Below, in pieces: positions 11,501 to 23,499 of a stretch of DNA of 64,000 nt. The position numbers were made by a program, and so were the translations under genes. Origin of the DNA: Ophelia neglecta (Eukaryota); NCBI GenBank assembly GCA_965285935.1, contig OZ260667.1, positions 33,480,001-33,544,000 of the forward strand, written 5' to 3'. The notes under the pieces are model-generated. The model was not told where the DNA came from, did no database searches, and saw only the letters and a program-made list of their open reading frames with translations. How positions within the stretch are numbered: position 1 is the first letter of the stretch; every line of letters begins with the position of its first letter.

Positions 11501-13878
11501 CGATGATCAATCAGCTTCACATGCTATCGGAGGATCCGTCAAGCACGTGAGCTAAGAAATAAATTGATTACTTTCAAACATAAAGGAAATGAATTGTTGT
11601 GTTAAAAACTGCTGTCTGCTCCATAAGCATCTGTTTTGGTTGAGTCAATTGATCAGACATACTGTTGTTTTGACATGGCTTCTATTTAAGCTTGAGCTAT
11701 TTATCAATCTAACATTTGAAGCCAATCATACAAATTTGTTTTCTTCATAATCATTCAAGATCGAAGAAAGACGTGTATACCAAATACATATTGAACAATC
11801 ATTATCCAACAATCAGAAGCATACTTTAAGATTCTTTGTTTGGTTTATGCTATCGCATCGGCATTGTATCCAACTCCTCAGGCGATGTATTGTTCCATAG
11901 ACTCGCTTACTTATTTCCTAGTTTAACTAATCATATCGTGGTATTTACCCGGCCTATAATTATGATCGCTGTCTATTGTTATATCAATTTCATATATAAA
12001 CATATAAACACAACGATTTCTTAGCCAATAAAAATGAAATGGTACAAAATAAGGTTACACGATTTAACTGACTCAAGAACCAAACAATCTACATTGAAGC
12101 AGGGAAGGCCTTGTATTCCCGAGTAAAGATATACATATTGGTGAAGCGAAAAACTTGAATACGCTGCAAGTATATGTTTCAATTGGTAATATTTCATATT
12201 TCAAGTTGAAACGGTAACAATTAAACCGGGTCTTGATAGATGAATATATTTGCAACAGAAGTAAGAAGTCGTTGGTATATAGAAAATAACCAATAAAATT
12301 GCTGTAATTGAGTAAAACACCCGAGAGTTCTGTTAGTACTATATAGAAGTAGAATCAGGCAGAGATGTTGACTGTCCGGTATAGGATCCTCGACCAGTTT
12401 AGGAGTTTAGGAATGAAAGAAAGGAGGACAGTTACTGTAGCAAACCATGTCGAATAAACACAAAAGTTATTTGCTATTTTTTACAATTATAAACAGAATA
12501 AGCCCATTTAAGATTCAAAGACTATACCCAACCATGCACAGTGTGTAATTTGTAAATGTTTGTATGCAACTCATACATTGGCTTGTGTGCTTGGTATCCA
12601 CGCAGGTTTTTTGTTGATAAGTTTATTAGGGCAAACACGGGAAGCCGTTCCGCCACAATACAGTCCGATATTCACAGGCTTCATGTCATCTTTCCCTACT
12701 TACGTGGAAACATAATCTATTATATATTTATATATCAACGTTGTCATTTCAAAACATCAAAGACATGTCCACATATTTAACATTTCAAGATTATTGATTA
12801 ACATTACTTAAAACCTTAATAACCATGATATATTTCCAAAACCAGGTTAACAAACAGGTTTTGACATTTAAATTTCGACTTGAACCTATGACAATTAACA
12901 GATTATACATCAATTCATACGTAATGCATATTTGAGGAATATGACTGACCATTTTTATGACAATGTACAGATAAGCGGTTCATAATAATTCCGTAAACAA
13001 TGCACATAGTACGTTTTAACATGACAACGAAGAGATGTATAGTTTCATATTATACTATGGGCTATAAAAAATAATACTGACCCAGGAAATAAATCTACTA
13101 TTAGAGTATGGTTGACTATACAATAATAACGACTGGTTTGAAGTGTGGTTTTCTTTTATGACCAAACCCTGTCTCCACCACCCGTTGTTTTTTCTCCAGG
13201 GTTGTATCGAACGACACCATTATTGGTCGCTGGCGATGTGATGATCTTTAATCAGTGTTTATGCCGTCAGTCCTCTTCGGAAATCCAATAAAGTCTCAAT
13301 TTCCCAGCATAGAAGTATTAGCACGATAAACCTAGTCCGCTGCCTGGCGGATCTAGTCTCGCCTCTTCTTATTATGGCCTGTATAATCTGGTCCACTGAG
13401 AATCAGTCTGCAGACAATTTGTAGGGAAAGGTGAGAGCTTTAAGTCGCAGGAGGGAATATAAGAGCCCGGTAACATATAGGGATAAAGCATTGCTTGGCA
13501 CATTACAGTAATCTCCTCGGCCTACCTGGGGCAAGAGCCACGCTTCACCCACTTTGGTCTGTCCTAAGTCTACTCGTTTTCATAAGTGCCCAGTGGTCAC
13601 CCTTTATCATCCCCTACAGGCAGACGTTAAATTATACAGTAAGGCTTCCCCTTAATAACAACGCTCAAATATTTCTGCAGTTATATTCATAATGACATTG
13701 AAAAATACAAATTAAAGGCATTGGGACAAGTAACCTCTTCCTAGAGCCCACTCCAGATCACTGTTAGTATATTCTTTATGGCATGGTATTTAACCAGCGA
13801 GTGTAAATGTGGATAGGTAGAGTTGCCATACCGAATTTCCATACAAGGAGATTTATTATAAAACTGTTCTTGCCTTCG

Positions 13879-13883
13879 GTTTA
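13879..13883 (+). repeat. Target-site duplication GTTTA (left copy; right copy at 22248-22252)
   Basis: The same 5-mer abuts both TIR ends: ttcg-GTTTA-[TACGG...CCGTA]-GTTTA-tgac. Confidence 0.85.
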
Positions 13884-14500
13884 TACGGTAGCCCATCGTG
13901 CGAAATTTGTAAGGGTAAAGCTCCAACAATTACGCGCGCCTCGTGGACGGCATCATTTTCCTTACACCCCAAGGTGAGTGAATCTGTTTTATCTACCAAT
14001 GTATTGCTTGGCAGTCTTTGTGTAATACATTAAACGAAAGTTAGGAAATTCGTTGTCAATCCTGTGTACTGGTTTGATTTATCGAGATAGCTATTTGTGA
14101 ACAATTCTCGAGCAACATCAAGCGTGGGCGATATTAGGAGAAATAACACCTTAAGTTCCCGTTGCTGTCGGCTTGGTGCACTTTTCGAACCTGAAACTTA
14201 ATTGACAGTAGCTACTGATAACTGTTAACATGTCCATGGTATCTGCTCAGTTTAGAATGATGCGGTTTTTTTATCCTAGCCGTTCAAATAAGTTTTCGAT
14301 GCGCGTGTGTGTAAGGGCACGGCGCGCGTGTAAGAAAGGGCACTAGCCGAGAAAAGGGCACGTAAAAGTAAGGCAACGCACTCTCTGTGATTGTTGCTGT
14401 TCAGTTCCTGGCTTAGAAAGTGGTTCTTTTGCAATCTTTTACGTACAAATGGTCGACCTTTGCCAAGAAGTCACTGATTTTAAGCCATGTTTTCCATAGA
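13884..14500 (+). repeat. Left terminal inverted repeat (~617 bp)
   Basis: Reverse-complement match to 21632-22247. By manual comparison the outer 392 bp (13884-14275) are identical, and the inner ~225 bp carry about 13 substitutions and 1 indel. Confidence 0.95.
13950..13980 (+). promoter_or_regulatory. TIR-embedded initiator-like motif and splice donor (putative non-coding first exon), mirrored at 22151-22181 on the - strand
   Basis: Inr-like TCATTT near 13953 followed by consensus donor AAG|GTGAGT (intron starts 13974; mirror copy 22157). Both internal genes have an acceptor 2-4 nt before the ATG. Confidence 0.55.
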
Positions 14501-14732
14501 CTCAAGTATTCTTTTTATAATGTTTAAATAGCGCAATACTATATTGAATGTTTAGCCTGTTTCATGGTTCTTTTATAAGACTTAGCCTATAATGCCATTT
14601 GCAAAGAGCGATATCTATATATGATCGGCCCATTTTATCTATTTCACAATGTTTTGTGAAATATATTTCACTGTATCTCTCAGCGTTAATTTTAATAAAC
14701 GATTTGTGCATGTTTTTTGGCATTTCAGAATC

Positions 14733-15371
14733 ATGGAATTCCTTGAAACAAGTGTCCACGAGGTGCATGGTGATGATGTATCGTATTCCTGCGATGAATG
14801 TGATTTTAAAACGCCCAAGTTGTCCAATCTGAAGAGACACTGCTGCCGCATGCACGGCGAGAAAGTACATGGTTGTACACAGTGTGACAAAAAGTTCGCT
14901 CTCAAATCAGATGCCATTTATCACAGTGCGGCACATACAAGAAGTTACCTCTGCAGTTCCTGTGGGAAAGGGTATGCTAGCAAACATGGTTTACAAGCCC
15001 ATATGGACACTGTACATTCATCTGCGGGTTTGAGGTGTAAACTATGTGATAAAACATTTGCGTTCCAGTGCCAACTAAAAGACCATATCAATGCTCACCA
15101 TGAAATACTCATGCACTCATGCCAATTTTGTAATAAAAAGTTTGCAACGAGGTCATCTGTGTGTAATCATCGGAAGATTTGCCACAAAAATCCAAAGAAA
15201 GAAATTCATCCTTGTTCCAAATGTGGGAAAAAGTTCAGTTCCAAGGAATATCTACGGAAGCATGACATTGGTAAACACAGCCTCAAACAGTTTCGCTGCC
15301 CATTTGAGGATTGTCAGGAAGTGTTCAACTGGCCACAAGGTCTCAAAAAACATAAAAAAAAACACACATAA
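14733..15371 (+). CDS. Seven-finger C2H2 zinc-finger protein (212 aa), element-encoded
   Basis: Seven Cx2-4C...Hx3-4H units: CDEC, CTQC, CSSC, CKLC, CQFC, CSKC and CPFEDC. The ORF track starts at 14649, but a splice acceptor (ttttttggcatttcag, ending 14728) lies just before the in-frame ATG at 14733 (MEFLETS), which I take as the true start. Confidence 0.9.
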   Translation: MEFLETSVHEVHGDDVSYSCDECDFKTPKLSNLKRHCCRMHGEKVHGCTQCDKKFALKSDAIYHSAAHTRSYLCSSCGKGYASKHGLQAHMDTVHSSAGLRCKLCDKTFAFQCQLKDHINAHHEILMHSCQFCNKKFATRSSVCNHRKICHKNPKKEIHPCSKCGKKFSSKEYLRKHDIGKHSLKQFRCPFEDCQEVFNWPQGLKKHKKKHT

Positions 15372-15820
15372 CATTGGACTGTATTTAAGTGTCATTACTA
15401 GGAACGAGAGTCATATATATTTATAGATAAATTCGTAGACGCATATACATAAAATGTTACCCTAATTGTTATGGCTGCTGTGCACTAAAAAGCGTGCCTG
15501 CAAGGTATCGGAAACCGGAGGCCCTATGATCAAGTTTTAAGTTTACAACGGCAGAATTGTCTATATTTTAAGTTGCGTTTCTCGTTTATTTTGACTTTAA
15601 ACTTTTTAATTCACAACTACATCTGTATTGTATTGTTCGATAGCTACTCTAGTAGAAGTTTAAGCCTTATACTTTTGTCTTATTGGTGATTAATCAAACC
15701 AAGGATGTCTGGTATACAGCATACCACGTCTTCGTGACATATTTTTGATCATTGAGTCAGTTTTTTTTACCTTAATTGAGTTATTTACTGATTGATGTGA
15801 TATGATGAAGGATAATATAC

Positions 15821-15829
15821 TTTATTAAA
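15821..15829. terminator. Candidate bidirectional polyadenylation signal TTTATTAAA
   Basis: Reads AATAAA on the - strand (15821-15826) and ATTAAA on the + strand (15824-15829), midway between the two convergent stop codons. Confidence 0.3.
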
Positions 15830-16287
15830 TGGTGCTTAAAATATTTAGAATCATTAGGTACAAGCTTTTTAAATGTATTATCAAATCACAGACCACTATC
15901 ACTGACCGGTGCAGTGTACTTCCCTTCGTAAAAACGCATATTGTGTTCACATTATAGAAGTTGAATGCACAAATACGAAGAAGACAGGTCATTTCGAGAA
16001 AGCATTTACTAGTACAATTGATTAACAAGACTTATATATAATCGACAGTATTAACATTAAAGTTTGTTCAGGAATCGATAATTCGAGCCATGTGCTTTTT
16101 TATGATGTTTTTTTTTTGACAATGTTCGTTCAGCAAAATAAAGTTTGTTCATAAGTTGTGTTATACAATAAAATGGAAAAATGTTCTACTTCTTCTCATA
16201 TTACATGTTAACAAATATGTATGTGCTATCAAGCCGGCGTATCTTCACAGAGAAAATCATATCCACCGGGTTTTCACTTGGACCCAC

Positions 16288-16444
16288 TCACACTCTTTGG
16301 TGAGACATAAGTTTCGACTCATCGGTCTTATAATACTGCCGGACTCCACGAGCGCCTCTAGACGGGGAGTCCGGCCCATGTATCCTGGAAGACTTTCGCT
16401 TCTGTTGACGCTGCGAGCGCTCCTTCTTGTCAAACATATGATCC
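16288..16444 (-). CDS. Transposase-exonuclease fusion, last coding exon (basic C-terminus)
   Basis: Strong acceptor tttcctttcttttaacag|G. The phase-2 join gives R-DHMFDKKERSQRQQKRK...YYKTDESKLMSHQRV*. The five exons total 4,674 nt, a multiple of 3, giving 1,557 aa. Confidence 0.65.
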
Positions 16445-16551
16445 CTGTTAAAAGAAAGGAAATCTAGTTCACTTGTTGGTAATGTACATTTCTGCATACA
16501 AATAAATTAAAAATTCATTTGAACAAAATGGAATTAAATTGGGATTAGCAC

Positions 16552-16689
16552 CTGACAGCAATTTGATTGATGCACAAGGGGTCAATTCTACCACACGCTT
16601 GCTCTTGGGATTGTGCCGTATCCATTGGACCTGTCAAAGTGTCGTGTTGTGGATAGACTCGCTTTTTTGAGGTCATCAAAGAAAATTTT
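16552..16689 (-). CDS. Transposase-exonuclease fusion, coding exon 4
   Basis: Branch-like CTAAT plus acceptor tttcattgcag|. The phase-2 join gives LDPNR-KFSLMTSKKRVYP. Donor AG|GTGCTA at 16551. Confidence 0.65.
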
Positions 16690-16775
16690 CTGCAATGAAA
16701 TACATTAGTAAATACGTTTTTTGTGTTAGAGCAACAGCACAAGTCAGTTAGTTAATCTCTGTACGAAAATAGTAC

Positions 16776-19593
16776 CTGTTTGGGTCCAAACGCATGTGTA
16801 TGATCTCACAAGCACTGCTGAGTGCTGGTTTAATCTCGTGTGGCTGAAGAACCCCAGAACCAGAGGCATGCAAATCCTGAAAGGTGCTAAAAAAGTGTTC
16901 GCCGTCAAGGCTACCTATAGCACGAGCATTGTACGACTGCTTGTCTAGCAAACCAAATAATTGTATGCGCCTTTCAATCCCAGTTAACAGACCCTCGTAT
17001 AACACCACTGGGATGTCCTTAACGTGACTGGTATTGGGGGGAAAGTGGCTGAAATCAACGTCTCGGAGAAGCCATGCTTTAAGATCCAGCAACCACTCTG
17101 TTCTCTGTGTGACTGAAATTCCGGGACTATCAACAGATGCATATGCATGCCTTATGAGGCGACAAAATTCTGCTTCCTCAAAATCACCATTACGTGACAT
17201 AGCCTCTTCCACTTCTTCAGTGAATAGGGCTGACGCGAATTCAGGAGATTGTTTGTCAACCGTGCAGTCTTCTACAATTGTCCTCTGGAGAATGTGTTTG
17301 GTTTCACTGCTTTCTGCCACCCTAAGCCATGCGGATTTGTATATGTTCGCCTTCTGCATTCCATTCTTGCAAATCTTTGATCTGAATCCAGTAAATTGGT
17401 GATAAAAATCTAAAATGAACAGGCTGTACTCAGCTATGGAGGGTATGTATTCCGGCCTAGAATACCAGTGAATGGGATTGTATTGAGAGTTTATTCCCTC
17501 GATGATGATGCCATCTTTGAAAGGAAGTGAGGCTTTCCAGTCCTGCAAGGTTTTGTGCCAAGTATACTCTGCCCAAACTGCACCAAGTTCGTCCTTCGGT
17601 AGTTTCTGCAACAAACTTTTTAGTACATCACATACTCTATGTTTTCTAATCTTATTTTCTGAGCTTTTCAATCTCGAAGAATCTCCGTATTGCAATGACA
17701 GGAAGTTACATATGCCTTTCTTGTCATTCTTTGATAGCTTGAAGCCATTTGCTCTAATTTCATCCAACACAGGATCAACTATCTTCTGTAGGTCATTCAA
17801 AGTGTACATTTCATTTATGCTTTCAGCTGTGCGTAAGGACATCTCAAACATGTCAAAACTGTCAGCCAGCACAAGTTTCTTCTCCAAGTTACGTTGCCGA
17901 CGACTAGGCTGTCTTGACTTAAAATCACCTGAGAACGAATTCCACATGCTTAAAAGATGTTTTTGTTGAAGATGAAAATGTTGCTCATCACTACCTTCTT
18001 GCTGGTTGGTGTTGTTACCTGTGACATCATCTATATTTTCTTCCACATTTGCCTGTTCAGCGTCTTCACAAATTCCTAGGCTATCGCCGAATGATGAACC
18101 TTCAGGGGCAGTATCCACCCAATTGGCAGTTGATACGGCTGAATATTGATCTTGATCTGTCTGCATCAAATAATCCACTAGATGATCATTTTCCACCAAT
18201 ACATCCCCAAGGTCTGTTTGTAGCTCATTCTCGGTTTCATGGTTGCTTGTCATGGTTGGTTCTAATGCTTTTTTTATACTAGACCCAAGCTTAATACGTT
18301 TCATCAACGACTGTACTGATGGTTCTTGCCAAAATGGAGAGGTGTCTCCATTTGCGGTCGGGATGGCGAGGATGCCGGAAGCCATGATCACTCGTGGTTG
18401 ATCACCAGACACCTCTGTCTTTAGATCAAATTGGTGTTTTGTCGCATGGGCTTGAAATATGTCCACAATGTTCAGAACTAATTTAGTCTTTTGCTGGGAT
18501 TTAACATCTTTGTAGTGATCTTTCTGTAATTGTAATATGGTCAAAGGCTGGTTTTGTGAGTCTCTCAGAGCAAGTTTTGCCCACTGACCATCTGAACAGC
18601 TGACTGGGACATAAATGCCTGCATGGTGCATTTTTTGCAGAATTTCATAGTGCATGGCTCTCATCTTATCCGCTGACAATGAATACCCTTTCAGTGCATA
18701 TCCCACAGGGAGTGCATGTGGTGCCTCAGGATTAAAATATCTATCCAAATCGCTTGCTACCCAAAGCAGAACCTCACTTGGTTTCTCCTTCGTTCGTAGG
18801 TATGCTTCTTTTACTATCATCAGACTATGCTCACAAAGCTGTCGCAACTTTACCAGTTGAAAGGTATCTTTGCGGTCTTGTTTATGACGTGAATGGTGCC
18901 AGATTTGGCCTGAAGATGTTGAATCATGTGCACAGGGAACTGCCTGAAGGGAAGGGACTTCACAAATAAATTTCACGTTTGTTTTCATAAAATGCTGACA
19001 TGCTCTCTTCAGTTCAACAGATGACGATGGGAACTTGGTTGGTCGTCTTGCTGATGGCGAACCATAAATATCAATGCCCAGTTGAATGATTTGCTTGGTC
19101 AATTCCTCATCGAAATGAATTTCCAGCACGGTTGATGACTCTTTGCTCCAGGAGACGTATAGTAGTTTTTTTGTGTCTGTTGCAGCCATTTCAAGCAGAA
19201 CTTGACAAACATACCTCTCCGGCAGCGTGTAATGGACGTCTGTCGTGAATCTTTTCCCAGGATAGGGACATTTTATTTCCACTGAAGTTGCTTCACATGT
19301 TATATCACTTGGTCTTATGTCACCATCTGGGCTCACAATGAGGAATGGAGCTTCATCTACTTCTGCAAGTATTGTACAACCCTTTTCAAAGAACACGCTT
19401 CCTGCTTGGAGCGAAGGTATTATTTTGCATGTCAAGGTCGCAACAGCATCTAACTCATGATGAGTTCCATAGTCAAGTAGCTTCTGAACATCTTCTGTAA
19501 ATGGGGCTTTTGGTTTGCCATGCATCACGCTGTCGAAGTGTTCCTTCATGTCGTTCAATTTCCCTAATCCAAGTGCCGAGTATGCAGTGCTGC
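16776..19593 (-). CDS. Transposase-exonuclease fusion, coding exon 3 (YqaJ core, second Asp, DxxH motif, catalytic Glu)
   Basis: Acceptor tctatttcag|GC gives ITG-STAYSALG in frame. YqaJ motifs: YGTHHE, SPDG, VEIKCPY, YVCQVLLEM. P-transposase-like motifs: LPVGY, VSCSDGQ (D at 18592-18590), ILDFYHQFTGFR (D at 17410-17408), DKQSPEFASALFTEEV, EAEFCRLI, SLDGEHFFSTF (E at 16900-16898). Probable donor AG|GTACTA. Confidence 0.88.
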
Positions 19594-19827
19594 CTGAAAT
19601 AGAAATACATTCACCTTTTCAATTATTTAAGAAAATTGATCACACTCATTTTTGGCTGTTCCTCCTGCTATTGACAATACGAGGGGCAACAGGGGGAACA
19701 GTGATTTGTCACTAACGGTGCCTCCTTGGTAAATATGACATCATATAAAGAAAACGAATGATTGGTCACTTTTATATAAGGGCAACAGTGACTACATACT
19801 GCAAAATCATACACTATGTTTTCTGAC

Positions 19828-20439
19828 CTGTAATTTTTGCTTTCTTTCGCAACTGGAACCAAGGTTGAGATCGTTGTTTTATGAGTTCAGGATCTGTCTG
19901 TGATTCGTCATTGGCAAGGCACACATAATTACCTTGGTGCAGCATACTGATAAAGCCCTTTCCTTCTTGGTAATTCTCATCATTTTGCATAATTGCTGCA
20001 GCATGCAAACACGTATCAATAGTGTCCATTGCTTGCTGCACACATGCATCTATTTGCGCAAGAGCTGTTCTCAAGGCGCTGATGATGTAACTGTATTTGG
20101 GGTTGTCTTTTTTACATTTCTCAGCTTCTGCCTTGTTCATGGACTCCCATTTGTCTAAGCACAAATTTTTTTTCACCTTAACCTCTCTCAGTTCCTTAAC
20201 TCGGACGCTTAATATATGGACAATTTGACGGCAGTCTTCAATCAATTTCTTGTTGTTGACTTCCTTAATGTCAATTCTTCCCATCTTGATTTCATAATCG
20301 CACTGTTCCATAACACATGATATCGATTTCGCTTCGATGTCTAGTCTTTCTTCTTTTTCTTGGAGAGTGGGCGGTCCTTCGTGGCCAAATAAATTTACCA
20401 CTGCATCTTTTCCTTTGGTGCAGGTATTTATTTTTTTAC
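19828..20439 (-). CDS. Transposase-exonuclease fusion, coding exon 2 (coiled-coil-like region and start of YqaJ domain)
   Basis: Acceptor acattttag|GT joins in frame to give LCFDG-KKINTCTKGKDAVVNLFGHE. It ends QRSQPWFQLRKKAKITG at donor G|GTCAGA (phase 1). Confidence 0.85.
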
Positions 20440-20537
20440 CTAAAATGTAATTGAATTATTATAAAATTAGATACTGATTGTTTAATAATACAATCATTAG
20501 GATGTCTACTATATTATATTATTTGTCGGGTACATAC

Positions 20538-21486
20538 CATCAAAGCAAAGTTTGTGAGGTTTGGTCTTGTCCAGTAATCGAGACATAGGCTCCATAAAAC
20601 CAGCTTCCATGTCTGCCATAAATGGTTCTTGTTCCAATACACCCTTGATGGGTACAGCAAAGTTTATTCGACTCTTTGAAGGGTCGAGGTGGTCTTCCGG
20701 TGAAGTGCCCTGACCAGTGTTTTTTTGACCACTCATAAAGAACAGGAATTTTCGTTTAAAAAGCTTGAAGCCTGCCCTCCAGAATGCCTTAACCTGTTCA
20801 TCGTATCTCATTTGTGAAGTTTTGTTCACACTAAAATAGTCAACAACATCCAAGAAAAGAAGGTAACTTATATTGTTCATCGGCAGCTTTCCTGAGGAAA
20901 CAAGGTAGAATAGTTTATTCCATCGCATCAATTGCCCATGCTCTTTAAGTTTGTGTAGAACGTCGGGTAATAAACTCTGCATGCGATTTTCAACTGATTC
21001 AAATTCTTCCATGTCGTCCACTTCAGGATAATATTCAGTGTTATCAATAGGTGAACTATGCCCTTTTAGCTCATCTTCATTTGTAATATTCAAAACCGAA
21101 AAGCTTGCTTCAAGACAATCTTTCTCTGCGCTGCTGAACAAAGCCCTCTTAGCACTTACTGATGAATTGTCACATTTGCCTTTTTTCTGTGCAGGGCTTT
21201 TAGATGGTGTTTGAACTGCCCTGAGCTGAATCTCGTCAGTAGAAATCACAATTTCATTGCCGCTTTGATGTTGGTGCAGAGGCACAATATTCGAACCGTT
21301 TACAGTTATAATTTTTGAAATCATGACACTCTGCCCCGTTTTAGGGTGAATCCCAAACTCGCGGATTTTCATGGGTTTTGTGCCATGACTCTCAATGAGA
21401 TGTGAAGCTAGATCTTTGAAGGTTGTTGGCCCATGTGGACAATAGCCACAATAGTAAGCCCTGTTCATGTCTGGCAAAGGGTCCAT
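20538..21486 (-). CDS. Transposase-exonuclease fusion, coding exon 1 (N-terminal C2H2-like finger to first catalytic Asp)
   Basis: ATG at 21486 follows acceptor ttcttatag|GT. It encodes YYCGYCPHGPTTFKDLASHLIESH and ends KLCFDG (Asp codon 20541-20539) at donor G|GTATGT (intron starts 20537, phase 1). Confidence 0.85.
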
Positions 21487-21631
21487 ACCTATAAGAATAT
21501 AAGTTTATTGTCAGAGTATTAGCAATATCTATAGGTAAATATATATATATATATATATATATAAAACGTAGTTTTTAAACTGAAATACAAGCAGTCATAC
21601 ATTTATCAATGAAAATGAGTTTTATTGTGAT

Positions 21632-22247
21632 TCTATGGAAACATGGCCTTAAATCAGTGACTTCTAGGCAAAGGTCGAACATTTGTACGTAAAAGATCGC
21701 AAAAGAACCACTTTCTAAGCCAGGAACTGAACAGCAACAATCACAGAAAGTGCGTTGCCTTACTTTTACGTTCCCTTTACTCGGCTAGTGCCCTTTATTA
21801 CACGCGCCCCGTGCCCTTACATACACGCGCATCGAAAACTTATTTGAACGGCCAAGATAAAAAAACCGCATCATTCTAAACTGAGCAGATACCATGGACA
21901 TGTTAACAGTTATCAGTAGCTACTGTCAATTAAGTTTCAGGTTCGAAAAGTGCACCAAGCCGACAGCAACGGGAACTTAAGGTGTTATTTCTCCTAATAT
22001 CGCCCACGCTTGATGTTGCTCGAGAATTGTTCACAAATAGCTATCTCGATAAATCAAACCAGTACACAGGATTGACAACGAATTTCCTAACTTTCGTTTA
22101 ATGTATTACACAAAGACTGCCAAGCAATACATTGGTAGATAAAACAGATTCACTCACCTTGGGGTGTAAGGAAAATGATGCCGTCCACGAGGCGCGCGTA
22201 ATTGTTGGAGCTTTACCCTTACAAATTTCGCACGATGGGCTACCGTA
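21632..22247 (-). repeat. Right terminal inverted repeat (~616 bp)
   Basis: Reverse complement of 13884-14500. Similarity ends at TCTATGG (21632). Confidence 0.95.
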
Positions 22248-23499
22248 GTTTATGACAAGCCCATTCTTCTTTTAATAAACAAGTATAAAAAAAACCATCT
22301 GCAAAATTCAAATACATGTACAATTATCAATCAAGCAGAGAGTATGAGCATGTGGTGAGTTTTCAACACTCGCATAATGATTGACGTACCGGATTTTGTA
22401 CATGTATTGAACAGATCGCAGTATACATAGGGCGTGATCTTTAACTCGTTGTTTGTAACGGGCGATGCTTCAAATTGGCTCAGGGCTAGGAGTAGTGCAT
22501 GTGAGGAAGCAATCTTATACATTTTTAATGTAGCCATTTGGTCTCGGAACAAGACAGTGTTTTATAGACAACTAAAATGTAAGAACGTTAATCGAGTTAT
22601 AATTAGATGTTGTGAAATCTTGTTTTGTGTTATCTAATCTCGAGCCTGGACTTACCTATTAAAGTGCAATTTTGAAGCGTCTTCTTTCGGCTAATACAAG
22701 CTCACCTTTCAAGGACGAATTATTTGCCCAGAAGCTGTGTCATGGTGGCATATTTGCATGCATGGAAAGGATTGGGTAAAGCTTGGCGTGACATCTCCCA
22801 TCGTGTCTATTTTAAAGATAAGTTGGTCGCTTTAATCACGAAAAGGAAATAGGCTATCCTTGCACGCAGAGTCGTGCTTTCGTTGAAAATACCTGATGAA
22901 CCAAGAGCCTCGATGAGGAGAGGGCATGGCGGGCCGTCTGGCAGAGAATCAACAGCGTCACATTGACCTGCCAAATTAGACACAGTATAAGATGGATGAG
23001 GACACGAGGAGGTTTGTTACCATGCAGACAGTAGATGTGACTGGTTGCTTGACACTTAGTTGGCAGTGAGAAAAACGCTCTTTGGGGCTGCTTCAAGGAG
23101 CAGCCTGCAAAAATAACATCGTAAACGAGCCAGGCATGGTAACCACCTGGAAACGGCAATAAAAAAAGCAAGAGGGAATAACAGCCCGGCTATACTGGTG
23201 GCTGTGGATGAGGGTATTGTATTGGTGTGTACACAAAACGACTGGAAGTGTTTGTGAGTGCTGTGCGTGTCGTAATATAAGGCAGAAGAACGCCACAGAT
23301 AACGGACATGACGACTAAACGTATGCATGCCAGATGCTGGCGGCTGCCTCGTGACTGATCTGTGTCGGTGTACTGTGTGGGTCTGGTCGGGGCTGCTGAA
23401 CCCCGGCCCACCGGGCCAATCTGGCCCTAGCAGACCCGACCCCAGTCTGTCGCCCATGACACCACACACCATCATCACCTGCACGGCTATCGATTTCTC

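What the first reader, a model, noticed from the sequence alone, without database searches (positions are those of the whole stretch)
13884..14733. Both convergent genes appear to share one promoter and first exon duplicated in the TIRs
Seen: each TIR has an Inr-like TCATTT about 70 bp from the end and a consensus donor AAG|GTGAGT exactly 90 bp from the end (13974 on +, 22157 on -). Independently, in unique sequence, each gene has a splice acceptor just before its ATG: catttcag|aatcATG (14728/14733) and ttcttatag|gtATG (21489/21486). Inference: inward transcription from both ends gives the two mRNAs an identical short non-coding leader exon, with the rest of the TIR as intron 1. That would co-regulate the transposase and the zinc-finger protein. 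It resembles the TIR promoters of maize MuDR (mudrA/mudrB) and would explain why the TIRs are so long.
Basis: partly seen in the sequence, partly recalled or inferred. Interest (0 to 1): 0.75.

Follow-up and report, generated by a model that had tools for sequence, protein, structure and literature searches.

The report
Transposon ends carrying promoter and leader exon
Sequence comparison suggests that both genes of this young jumping gene begin with the same short exon inside its two mirrored ends, but no RNA data were available to confirm it.

Summary
These are the 609-nt TIRs, the perfect donor AAG|GTGAGT 90 nt from each end, and acceptors 4 and 2 nt before the two ATGs.

The donor 9-mer occurs only twice in the 64-kb window, at these two sites. 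TCATTT is a common word and carries no weight.

RNA could not be tested. The only public runs holding the element behaved as genomic DNA: no joints, and contigs crossing introns.

Comparative evidence supports the idea. Five diverged sister families in the same genome (23-30% protein identity in alignment A1) have unrelated end sequences. They share the layout:
- a 5-bp target duplication;
- convergent zinc-finger and nuclease-transposase genes;
- the best inward donor 66-155 nt from each end;
- an acceptor 0-4 nt before the ATG.

In family C neither gene body has its own start codon. The only in-frame ATG lies in the TIR exon.

TIR length is better explained by terminal plus subterminal repeated motifs than by the exon. 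Two families with 66- and 112-nt TIRs have their best donor beyond the TIR.

Verdict: a plausible animal analogue of MuDR TIR promoters, not yet shown. Earlier scan notes cover this element but not this feature.

The parts
13879..13883 (.). Left copy of the 5-bp target-site duplication, GTTTA.
   Evidence: The flanks of both ends were read. A 5-bp duplication is seen in 4 of 4 full-length copies.
13884..14492 (+). Left terminal inverted repeat, 609 nt.
   Evidence: 98% complementary to 21639-22247. One search found at least 40 matches in the genome.
13884..13973 (+). Outer 90 nt: proposed promoter plus non-coding leader exon of the zinc-finger gene. It contains no ATG, is 51% G+C and has CpG observed/expected 1.38.
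   Evidence: The outer 60 nt are the least variable part of the TIR among 29 distinct TIR copies.
13953..13958 (+). TCATTT, the Inr-like word. The match is weak and of chance level.
   Evidence: It is changed in 1 of 31 ends.
13971..13979 (+). Consensus 5' splice site AAG|GTGAGT; the exon ends at 13973.
   Evidence: The core GGTGAGT is intact in 31 of 31 ends.
13974..14728 (+). Proposed intron 1 of the zinc-finger gene (755 nt): the inner TIR plus 236 nt of unique DNA. It holds 15 ATGs and the repeated motifs TGTAAGGG and AAGGGCAC at 14310-14361.
13908..13915 (+). Terminal copy of the motif TGTAAGGG. The motif recurs at TIR position +427.
14729..15371 (+). Body exon of the zinc-finger gene, with the acceptor ending at 14728. 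The CDS is 14733-15371: 212 aa with seven C2H2 fingers.
   Evidence: One further in-frame ATG lies upstream at 14649, inside the proposed intron.
16748..19593 (-). Last coding exon of the transposase gene. It holds the main part of the YqaJ nuclease domain.
19828..20439 (-). Middle coding exon of the transposase gene.
   Evidence: GT/AG boundaries were read.
20538..21488 (-). First coding exon of the transposase gene. The acceptor ends at 21489 and the ATG is at 21486.
21489..22157 (-). Proposed intron 1 of the transposase gene (669 nt): the inner TIR plus 150 nt of unique DNA that includes a (TA)n run. It holds 11 ATGs.
22158..22247 (-). Outer 90 nt of the right TIR: proposed promoter plus leader exon of the transposase gene. 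It is identical to the left copy.
21639..22247 (-). Right terminal inverted repeat, 609 nt.
22248..22252 (.). Right copy of the 5-bp target-site duplication, GTTTA.

Best explanation
The element is a young 8.4-kb cut-and-paste transposon with two convergent genes: a C2H2 zinc-finger protein and a large transposase containing a YqaJ nuclease domain.

The proposed mechanism has four steps:
1. Each gene is transcribed inward from a promoter in the outermost 70-90 nt or so of its TIR.
2. The primary transcript starts with a short, ATG-free leader exon that ends at the AAG|GTGAGT donor at +90.
3. The rest of the TIR and the unique subterminal DNA are removed as a 5'-UTR intron (755 nt and 669 nt). 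That region carries 11-15 ATGs and the repeated putative protein-binding motifs.
4. The leader is joined to an acceptor 4 or 2 nt before the start codon.

Both mRNAs would therefore share promoter and leader.

Shown: the sequence features, their rarity, and their recurrence in sister families.

Inferred: that transcription starts there, that the sites are used, and that the two genes are co-regulated.
For: (1) The perfect donor 9-mer occurs only at these two sites in 64 kb. None of 528 background windows reaches its score. It is the best donor upstream of both acceptors by 5 score units.

(2) Both ATGs sit 2-4 nt after a YAG acceptor.

(3) Five sister families in the same genome repeat the layout. 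Their protein identity to this transposase is 23-30% in alignment A1. Their ends do not align beyond the terminal CACGGTG-like word. They share a 5-bp TSD and convergent zinc-finger and transposase genes. The best inward donor within the first 200 nt lies at +66, +97, +103, +113, +146, +155 and +155. Fisher-combined p is 5e-5 over 8 independent ends, and 1.3e-3 without this family.

(4) A YAG lies 0-4 nt before the ATG at 7 of 7 gene starts examined, against 12.8% of 2130 background ATGs. Under the stricter rule 'first ATG of the open frame' the count is 5 of 7.

(5) In family C both body exons begin at an acceptor with no ATG before the first conserved zinc finger. The only ATG-plus-donor combination upstream that is in frame with both is the TIR exon, with ATG at +48 and donor at +66. 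The N-terminal finger is conserved in 171 database proteins.

(6) There is no ATG in the outer 90 nt, but 11 and 15 ATGs lie in the would-be introns.

(7) In all 8 independent ends the segment from terminus to donor is richer in G+C (0.46-0.55) and in CpG (observed/expected 1.08-2.07) than the whole element (CpG 0.38-0.79).
Against: No RNA evidence of any kind is available. No listed run is recorded as RNA. The three runs laid show no joints and cross the introns and the intergenic DNA, so they are DNA.

The transcription start is unknown. TCATTT is a chance-level word. If it were used, the first exon would be only about 19 nt long.

The donors of families C, D, F and of the zinc-finger end of E are not above background on the weight matrix (p 0.12-0.38). 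In C and D an outward-strand site scores slightly higher. The matrix itself uses recalled frequencies.

I chose the gene starts in the sister families by eye. In 2 of 7 an in-frame ATG lies further upstream.

Exon-1 models for the transposase side of family B and the zinc-finger side of family E could not be made to fit.

High conservation of the outer 60-90 nt among copies is equally expected for transposase binding.
Confidence: 0.6

Rival explanations
1. Each gene has its own proximal promoter in the AT-rich unique DNA just upstream of its ATG. The acceptor-like and donor-like sequences are then unused or chance matches.
For: TATA-like runs lie upstream of both ATGs. A (TA)n run sits about 50-75 nt before the transposase ATG, and TATATAT about 115 nt before the zinc-finger ATG. 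The zinc-finger frame is open back to an in-frame ATG at 14649.
Against: The acceptor-before-ATG pattern recurs at 7 of 7 gene starts (5 of 7 under the strict rule) in four families whose sequences are unrelated. Family C genes have no start codon of their own. The perfect donor is unique in 64 kb.
Confidence: 0.15
2. The acceptors in front of both ATGs mainly serve to capture transcription from host genes. When the element sits in a host intron, host exons splice onto the transposon genes. The terminal donor plays no part in the element's own mRNAs.
For: Acceptors immediately upstream of transposase ORFs are reported as a general feature of vertebrate DNA transposons. In that preprint, 8 of 9 examined cases used such a site for host-transposase fusion (bioRxiv 10.1101/2020.05.07.082677; I read passages). 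Inward-facing acceptors at both ends would work in either orientation.
Against: This does not explain a consensus donor at a similar distance from every end. It does not explain the ATG-free leader. It does not explain the in-frame TIR start codon of family C. An autonomous element that depended on host promoters would be silent at most insertion sites.
Confidence: 0.12
3. The terminal GT-containing words are parts of transposase or zinc-finger binding sites, or chance. Their conservation reflects transposition requirements only.
For: The outer 60 nt are the most conserved part of the TIR among 29 distinct copies, non-autonomous ones included. GTAAG-containing motifs are repeated in the TIR.
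Against: The repeated motifs are different words from the +90 donor. The sister families keep a donor, not a shared sequence, at the equivalent place.
Confidence: 0.1

Closest known systems
Maize MuDR (mudrA/mudrB)
   Same: [quoted passage not shown] The TIRs also hold transposase-binding sites (PMC3310237; abstract and introduction passages read).
   Different: MuDR is a plant Mutator element. The element here has a 5-bp TSD and no MULE domain in Pfam. The proposal here adds a shared spliced leader exon, with the inner TIR acting as a 5'-UTR intron. In family C it adds a shared start codon. I did not see such a leader described for MuDR in the passages I read.
Splice acceptors immediately upstream of transposase ORFs in vertebrate DNA transposons (Cosby et al. 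preprint)
   Same: An acceptor sits directly before the transposase start codon and is carried by the ancestral transposon (bioRxiv 10.1101/2020.05.07.082677; passages read).
   Different: In those cases the acceptor was studied as the route to host-transposase fusion genes. Here a matching donor lies inside the element's own ends, and both genes of a two-gene element have the arrangement.
Galileo (P superfamily, Drosophila)
   Same: Unusually long TIRs with multiple binding sites for the transposase DNA-binding domain (PMC3688188; title and abstract start in the listing). Here terminal plus subterminal repeated motifs occupy the TIRs of families A, C and D. Two sister transposase ORFs give weak matches, below the curated cut-off, to the P/THAP9-type RNase H domain PF21787.
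   Different: Galileo has one gene. No THAP domain was found here. The TSD here is 5 bp, whereas P-type elements are recalled as 7-8 bp.
RAG-like / Transib transposons
   Same: A 5-bp TSD and ends resembling the CACAGTG heptamer: exact in family C, CACGGTG in family E. The RAGL transposon is described as having convergently oriented RAG1L and RAG2L genes (PMC7204232; abstract start in the listing).
   Different: No RAG1/Transib domain was detected by Pfam or PDB searches. The partner gene is a C2H2 zinc-finger protein, not RAG2-like. This element's own end is TACGGTAG.
Maize En/Spm leader exon (recalled, not read here)
   Same: A short first exon near the element's end, followed by a long first intron, before the coding exons.
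   Different: En/Spm has one promoter at one end and produces its proteins by alternative splicing. It does not have two mirrored promoters for two convergent genes.

Membership tests
MuDR-type TIR promoters (works-like test) | Two convergent genes between TIRs. | tested here: met
   The zinc-finger gene is on + (14733-15371) and the transposase gene on - (21486-16748).
MuDR-type TIR promoters (works-like test) | Transcription starts inside each TIR. | not testable with these tools
   No RNA run was found. The runs laid are DNA.
Mutator superfamily (membership) | MULE-type transposase and a TSD of about 9 bp (the TSD length is recalled). | tested here: not met
   No MULE domain in Pfam at E up to 10. 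A 5-bp TSD in 4 of 4 full-length copies.
P superfamily | P/THAP9-type RNase H catalytic domain. | tested here: inconclusive
   PF21787 matches 2 of 7 sister-family ORFs at E 0.0076 and 0.01, below the curated cut-off. There is no match in this element's own exons and none to PDB sequences. The structure model was too poor to use (mean pLDDT 43.9).
P superfamily | THAP DNA-binding domain and a 7-8-bp TSD (recalled). | tested here: not met
   No THAP match. The TSD is 5 bp.
Transib/RAG-like | A 5-bp TSD and CAC-heptamer-like termini. | tested here: met
   A 5-bp TSD in all six families. The ends are CACAGTG (C), CACGGTG (E), CACGCTG (B), CACGCCT (F), CAGGGTG (D) and TACGGTA (this element).
Transib/RAG-like | RAG1-core-like transposase. 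| tested here: inconclusive
   No Pfam or PDB sequence match. No usable fold.
Spliced 5' leader (5'-UTR intron) gene structure | Canonical donor and acceptor in the right order and strand, with no competing better site. | tested here: met
Spliced 5' leader (5'-UTR intron) gene structure | Junction observed in RNA. | not testable with these tools

The most novel reading that the evidence does not exclude
A whole group of animal DNA transposons, so far not described in the papers I could search, builds both of its genes as split genes. Their common first exon lies in the inverted ends. The promoter and leader are written once and used twice. In some families (C, probably B and E) the start codon and first codons are shared in the same way. 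The first intron doubles as the platform of repeated protein-binding motifs. Transcription, splicing and transposase binding would then be physically coupled at each end.
Probability: 0.35. Interest if true: 0.7.

Novelty: new variant of a known kind. Interest (0 to 1): 0.55.

Why it matters
If confirmed, this would be an animal counterpart of the MuDR solution to co-expressing two transposon genes from mirrored ends. It would add two twists: a spliced leader, and in one family a start codon that two different proteins share because it is encoded in the inverted repeat.

It would give a simple reason why the start codons sit directly behind acceptors. The ATG-rich, motif-rich end is removed from the mRNA.

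It would also make the outer 100 bp or so a candidate compact promoter for mollusc or annelid work.

It bears on how DNA transposons supply ready-made splice sites to host genes.

Tried and rejected
RNA test. The look-up of sequencing runs listed 3 runs of one sample, none recorded as RNA. Read laying on 13870-19869 showed contigs running through the 19594-19827 intron and the intergenic DNA, several different flanks at 13879-13884 and no joints. The runs are therefore DNA and cannot test the claim.

Transposase class. PDB sequence and profile searches gave nothing. AlphaFold with a 6-row alignment gave mean pLDDT 43.9, so I ran no fold search.

N-termini of homologues. The representative search with family C's first body exon found 171 proteins at E up to 0.001. 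Of the 18 I fetched, none begins like the TIR-exon peptide. Many are ORF-style calls that start at the nearest upstream M, so this neither supports nor refutes.

Family G (C1:28.28 Mb). No TIR was found in 13.4 kb, so I dropped it from all counts.

Exon-1 frame models. Those for the transposase side of family B and the zinc-finger side of family E did not fit. An earlier apparent fit for B came from my own off-by-one donor coordinate and was withdrawn.

Alignment of the ends. One row (the B transposase end) was given with wrong coordinates. I used only the terminal words read.

Selection on the zinc-finger gene in deletion derivatives. Most copies are decayed, so they say nothing about function.

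Findings search. Searches by words gave nothing on TIR promoters.

Literature. Two full-text searches (listings only) showed no paper describing a TIR-embedded shared leader exon in an animal DNA transposon. That is not proof of absence, and no supplements were opened.

Full report
**What is there**

The window holds an 8,364-bp element at 13884-22247. Its TIRs are 609 nt long and 98% complementary. It is flanked by a 5-bp duplication, GTTTA.

It carries two convergent genes:
- On the + strand, a 212-aa protein with seven C2H2 fingers (14733-15371).
- On the - strand, a gene of three coding exons (21486-20538, 20439-19828, 19593-16748). I read its GT/AG boundaries directly. It contains a YqaJ nuclease domain (PF09588, E 4e-6).

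The genome (762 Mb) has 4 full-length copies and many 2.2-3.2-kb deletion derivatives. One search gave at least 40 TIR matches. All 4 full-length copies show a 5-bp TSD.

**The observation**

The donor is exceptional:
- MAGGTRAGT occurs only at these two sites in the window.
- The chance of one in a given 850-nt stretch is about 0.014.
- 0 of 528 background windows reach its score on a weight matrix built from recalled frequencies.
- It outscores every other GT upstream of both acceptors, 12.3 against 7.3.

The outer 90 nt contain no ATG. The two would-be introns contain 15 and 11.

TCATTT is a common hexamer, with about a 7% chance in 90 nt. It is not evidence for a start site.

Among 31 element ends, the core GGTGAGT is intact in 31 and TCATTT in 30. 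The copies are only 0-7% diverged. The outer 60 nt are the most conserved part in all copies, non-autonomous ones included. This conservation therefore cannot separate promoter function from transposase binding.

**The RNA test failed for lack of data**

The run search returned three runs of one sample, none recorded as RNA.

Laid on 13870-19869, their contigs run without a break through the 19594-19827 intron and the 15372-16747 intergenic DNA. They show several different flanks at 13879-13884 and give no joints. They are genomic DNA. Nothing can be said about expression.

**Comparative test inside the same genome**

A six-frame search with the last transposase exon found diverged relatives. 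I could delimit five further families by their TIRs and TSDs:

| Family | Length (bp) | TIR (nt) | TSD |
|---|---|---|---|
| B | 8200 | about 66 | TGAGT |
| C | 8149 | 247 | CAGAA |
| D | 7600 | 472 | GAAAT |
| E | 9868 | 112 | CTATT |
| F | 7045 | 183 | TAAAT |

Protein identity to this element's transposase is 23-30% in alignment A1. All five have a C2H2 gene convergent with the transposase gene. Their ends share only a terminal CACGGTG-like word.

Donors. The best inward donor in the first 200 nt of each end lies at:
- +66 in C
- +97 in D
- +103 and +146 in B
- +113 in F
- +155 and +155 in E
- +90 in this element

Taken singly, only B and one end of E are clearly above background. C, D, F and the other end of E are not (p 0.12-0.38). 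In C and D an outward-strand site scores slightly higher. Combined over 8 independent ends, p is 5e-5. Without this element's family it is 1.3e-3.

Acceptors. At 7 of 7 gene starts that I could place (this element twice, D twice, F twice, and the B zinc-finger gene), a YAG lies 0-4 nt before the ATG. The background is 12.8% of 2130 ATGs. I chose these ATGs by eye. Under the rule 'first ATG of the open frame', 5 of 7 qualify. That is still about p 6e-4 by my own arithmetic.

**Family C gives the strongest argument**

Both of its body exons begin at an acceptor. Neither contains an ATG before the first conserved zinc finger. That N-terminal finger is conserved in 171 database proteins.

Upstream, the only ATG followed by a donor that is in frame with both bodies is in the TIR. 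The ATG is at +48 and the donor after +66. That leaves six codons plus one base. So in family C the TIR must supply the start codon of both genes. Transcription must begin within the outer 47 nt.

In family B the zinc-finger gene's exon-1 ATG is likewise in frame across two introns. The second exon of that gene aligns at the DNA level with this element's ATG region.

Models for the B transposase side and the E zinc-finger side did not fit.

I searched spliced models exon by exon only. No joined model went to any search or fold tool. Frames across junctions were checked inside scripts.

**Why the TIRs are long**

The leader explains 90 of 609 nt at most. In families B and E the best donor lies beyond their 66- and 112-nt TIRs.

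In A, C and D a motif occurs once near the tip and again two or three times further in. All copies have the same orientation. In C and D the motif occurs nowhere else in the element; for A only the TIR was searched.

| Family | Tip copy | Subterminal copies |
|---|---|---|
| A | +25 | +427 to +471 |
| C | +16 | +224 to +279 |
| D | +40 | +420, +447 |

In A and D the TIR covers the whole cluster. In C only the first subterminal copy (+224) lies inside the 247-nt TIR. This is the pattern of terminal and subterminal binding sites, as reported for Galileo's long TIRs (PMC3688188, listing abstract). These sites would lie in the proposed intron.

**Comparison with known systems**

MuDR is the closest functional analogue. 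It has two convergent genes transcribed from promoters within the TIRs (PMC3310237, passages). This element is not a Mutator element.

Acceptors directly before transposase ORFs are a recognised feature of vertebrate DNA transposons (bioRxiv 10.1101/2020.05.07.082677, passages). That also supplies a rival reading, capture of host transcription.

The superfamily remains open:
- An earlier scan note calls the transposase P-type.
- I saw only two PF21787 matches, both below the curated cut-off, in sister ORFs.
- The 5-bp TSD and the CACAGTG-like ends are Transib/RAG-like hallmarks.

**Verdict**

The Inr call and the explanation for TIR length are the weak parts.

Noticed in passing
L067:2403-2420 (family C end); L069:1646-1660 (family E end); window 13884-13894: All six families make 5-bp target duplications. 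Their ends read CACAGTG (C), CACGGTG (E), CACGCTG (B), CACGCCT (F), CAGGGTG (D) and TACGGTA (this element). That is the Transib/RAG hallmark. Yet the only domain hint is a weak P/THAP9-type RNase H match in two sister ORFs. The superfamily assignment deserves a proper fold-level test.
   Followed up: partly
window 14638-16095: In the DNA contigs the zinc-finger region is about 4 times deeper than the transposase region (311.8 against 70.3 in X1). There is a loose end at 16095. This fits abundant deletion derivatives of about 3.2 kb that keep the left TIR and the zinc-finger gene. Among the five derivative copies that cover the whole ORF, four carry indels, two of those also with stop codons; one is intact, with 13 aa changes.
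   Followed up: yes
L002 (G000 C5:72620880-72624488): One of the 4 full-length copies has a disrupted zinc-finger frame (3 stops in the expected frame at 99.6% DNA identity). The ORF is uninterrupted in this window's copy and in the C7 and C2 copies.
   Followed up: partly
L069:1673-1723 (family E TIR, +28 to +77): There are three tandem units of about 20 nt, each holding CTCAG[GA][AT]TTCG, inside the 112-nt TIR. The motif occurs only at the two ends of the element.
   Followed up: partly
ends of families B, C, E (L062, L067, L069, L070): Four of 8 independent ends carry ATGGC[GT] in a Kozak-like context inside the proposed first exon, at +48, +79, +88 and +100. It may be a start codon. From memory it also resembles a YY1-type site. 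Not tested.
   Followed up: no
window 21540-21565 (- strand view): A (TA)n microsatellite lies in the unique subterminal DNA 50-75 nt upstream of the transposase ATG, inside the proposed intron.
   Followed up: no
G000 C7:110057335-110207784: At least four copies of family E-like transposase ORFs lie within 150 kb on contig 7, on both strands. This may be a local cluster or a segmental duplication.
   Followed up: no
L039:1804-1806 (family D) and L063/L057 (family F zinc-finger gene): The family D transposase frame has a single in-frame TAG. The family F zinc-finger gene changes frame at an A-run between its first two fingers. So these particular copies are not fully intact, or the assembly erred in a homopolymer.
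   Followed up: no
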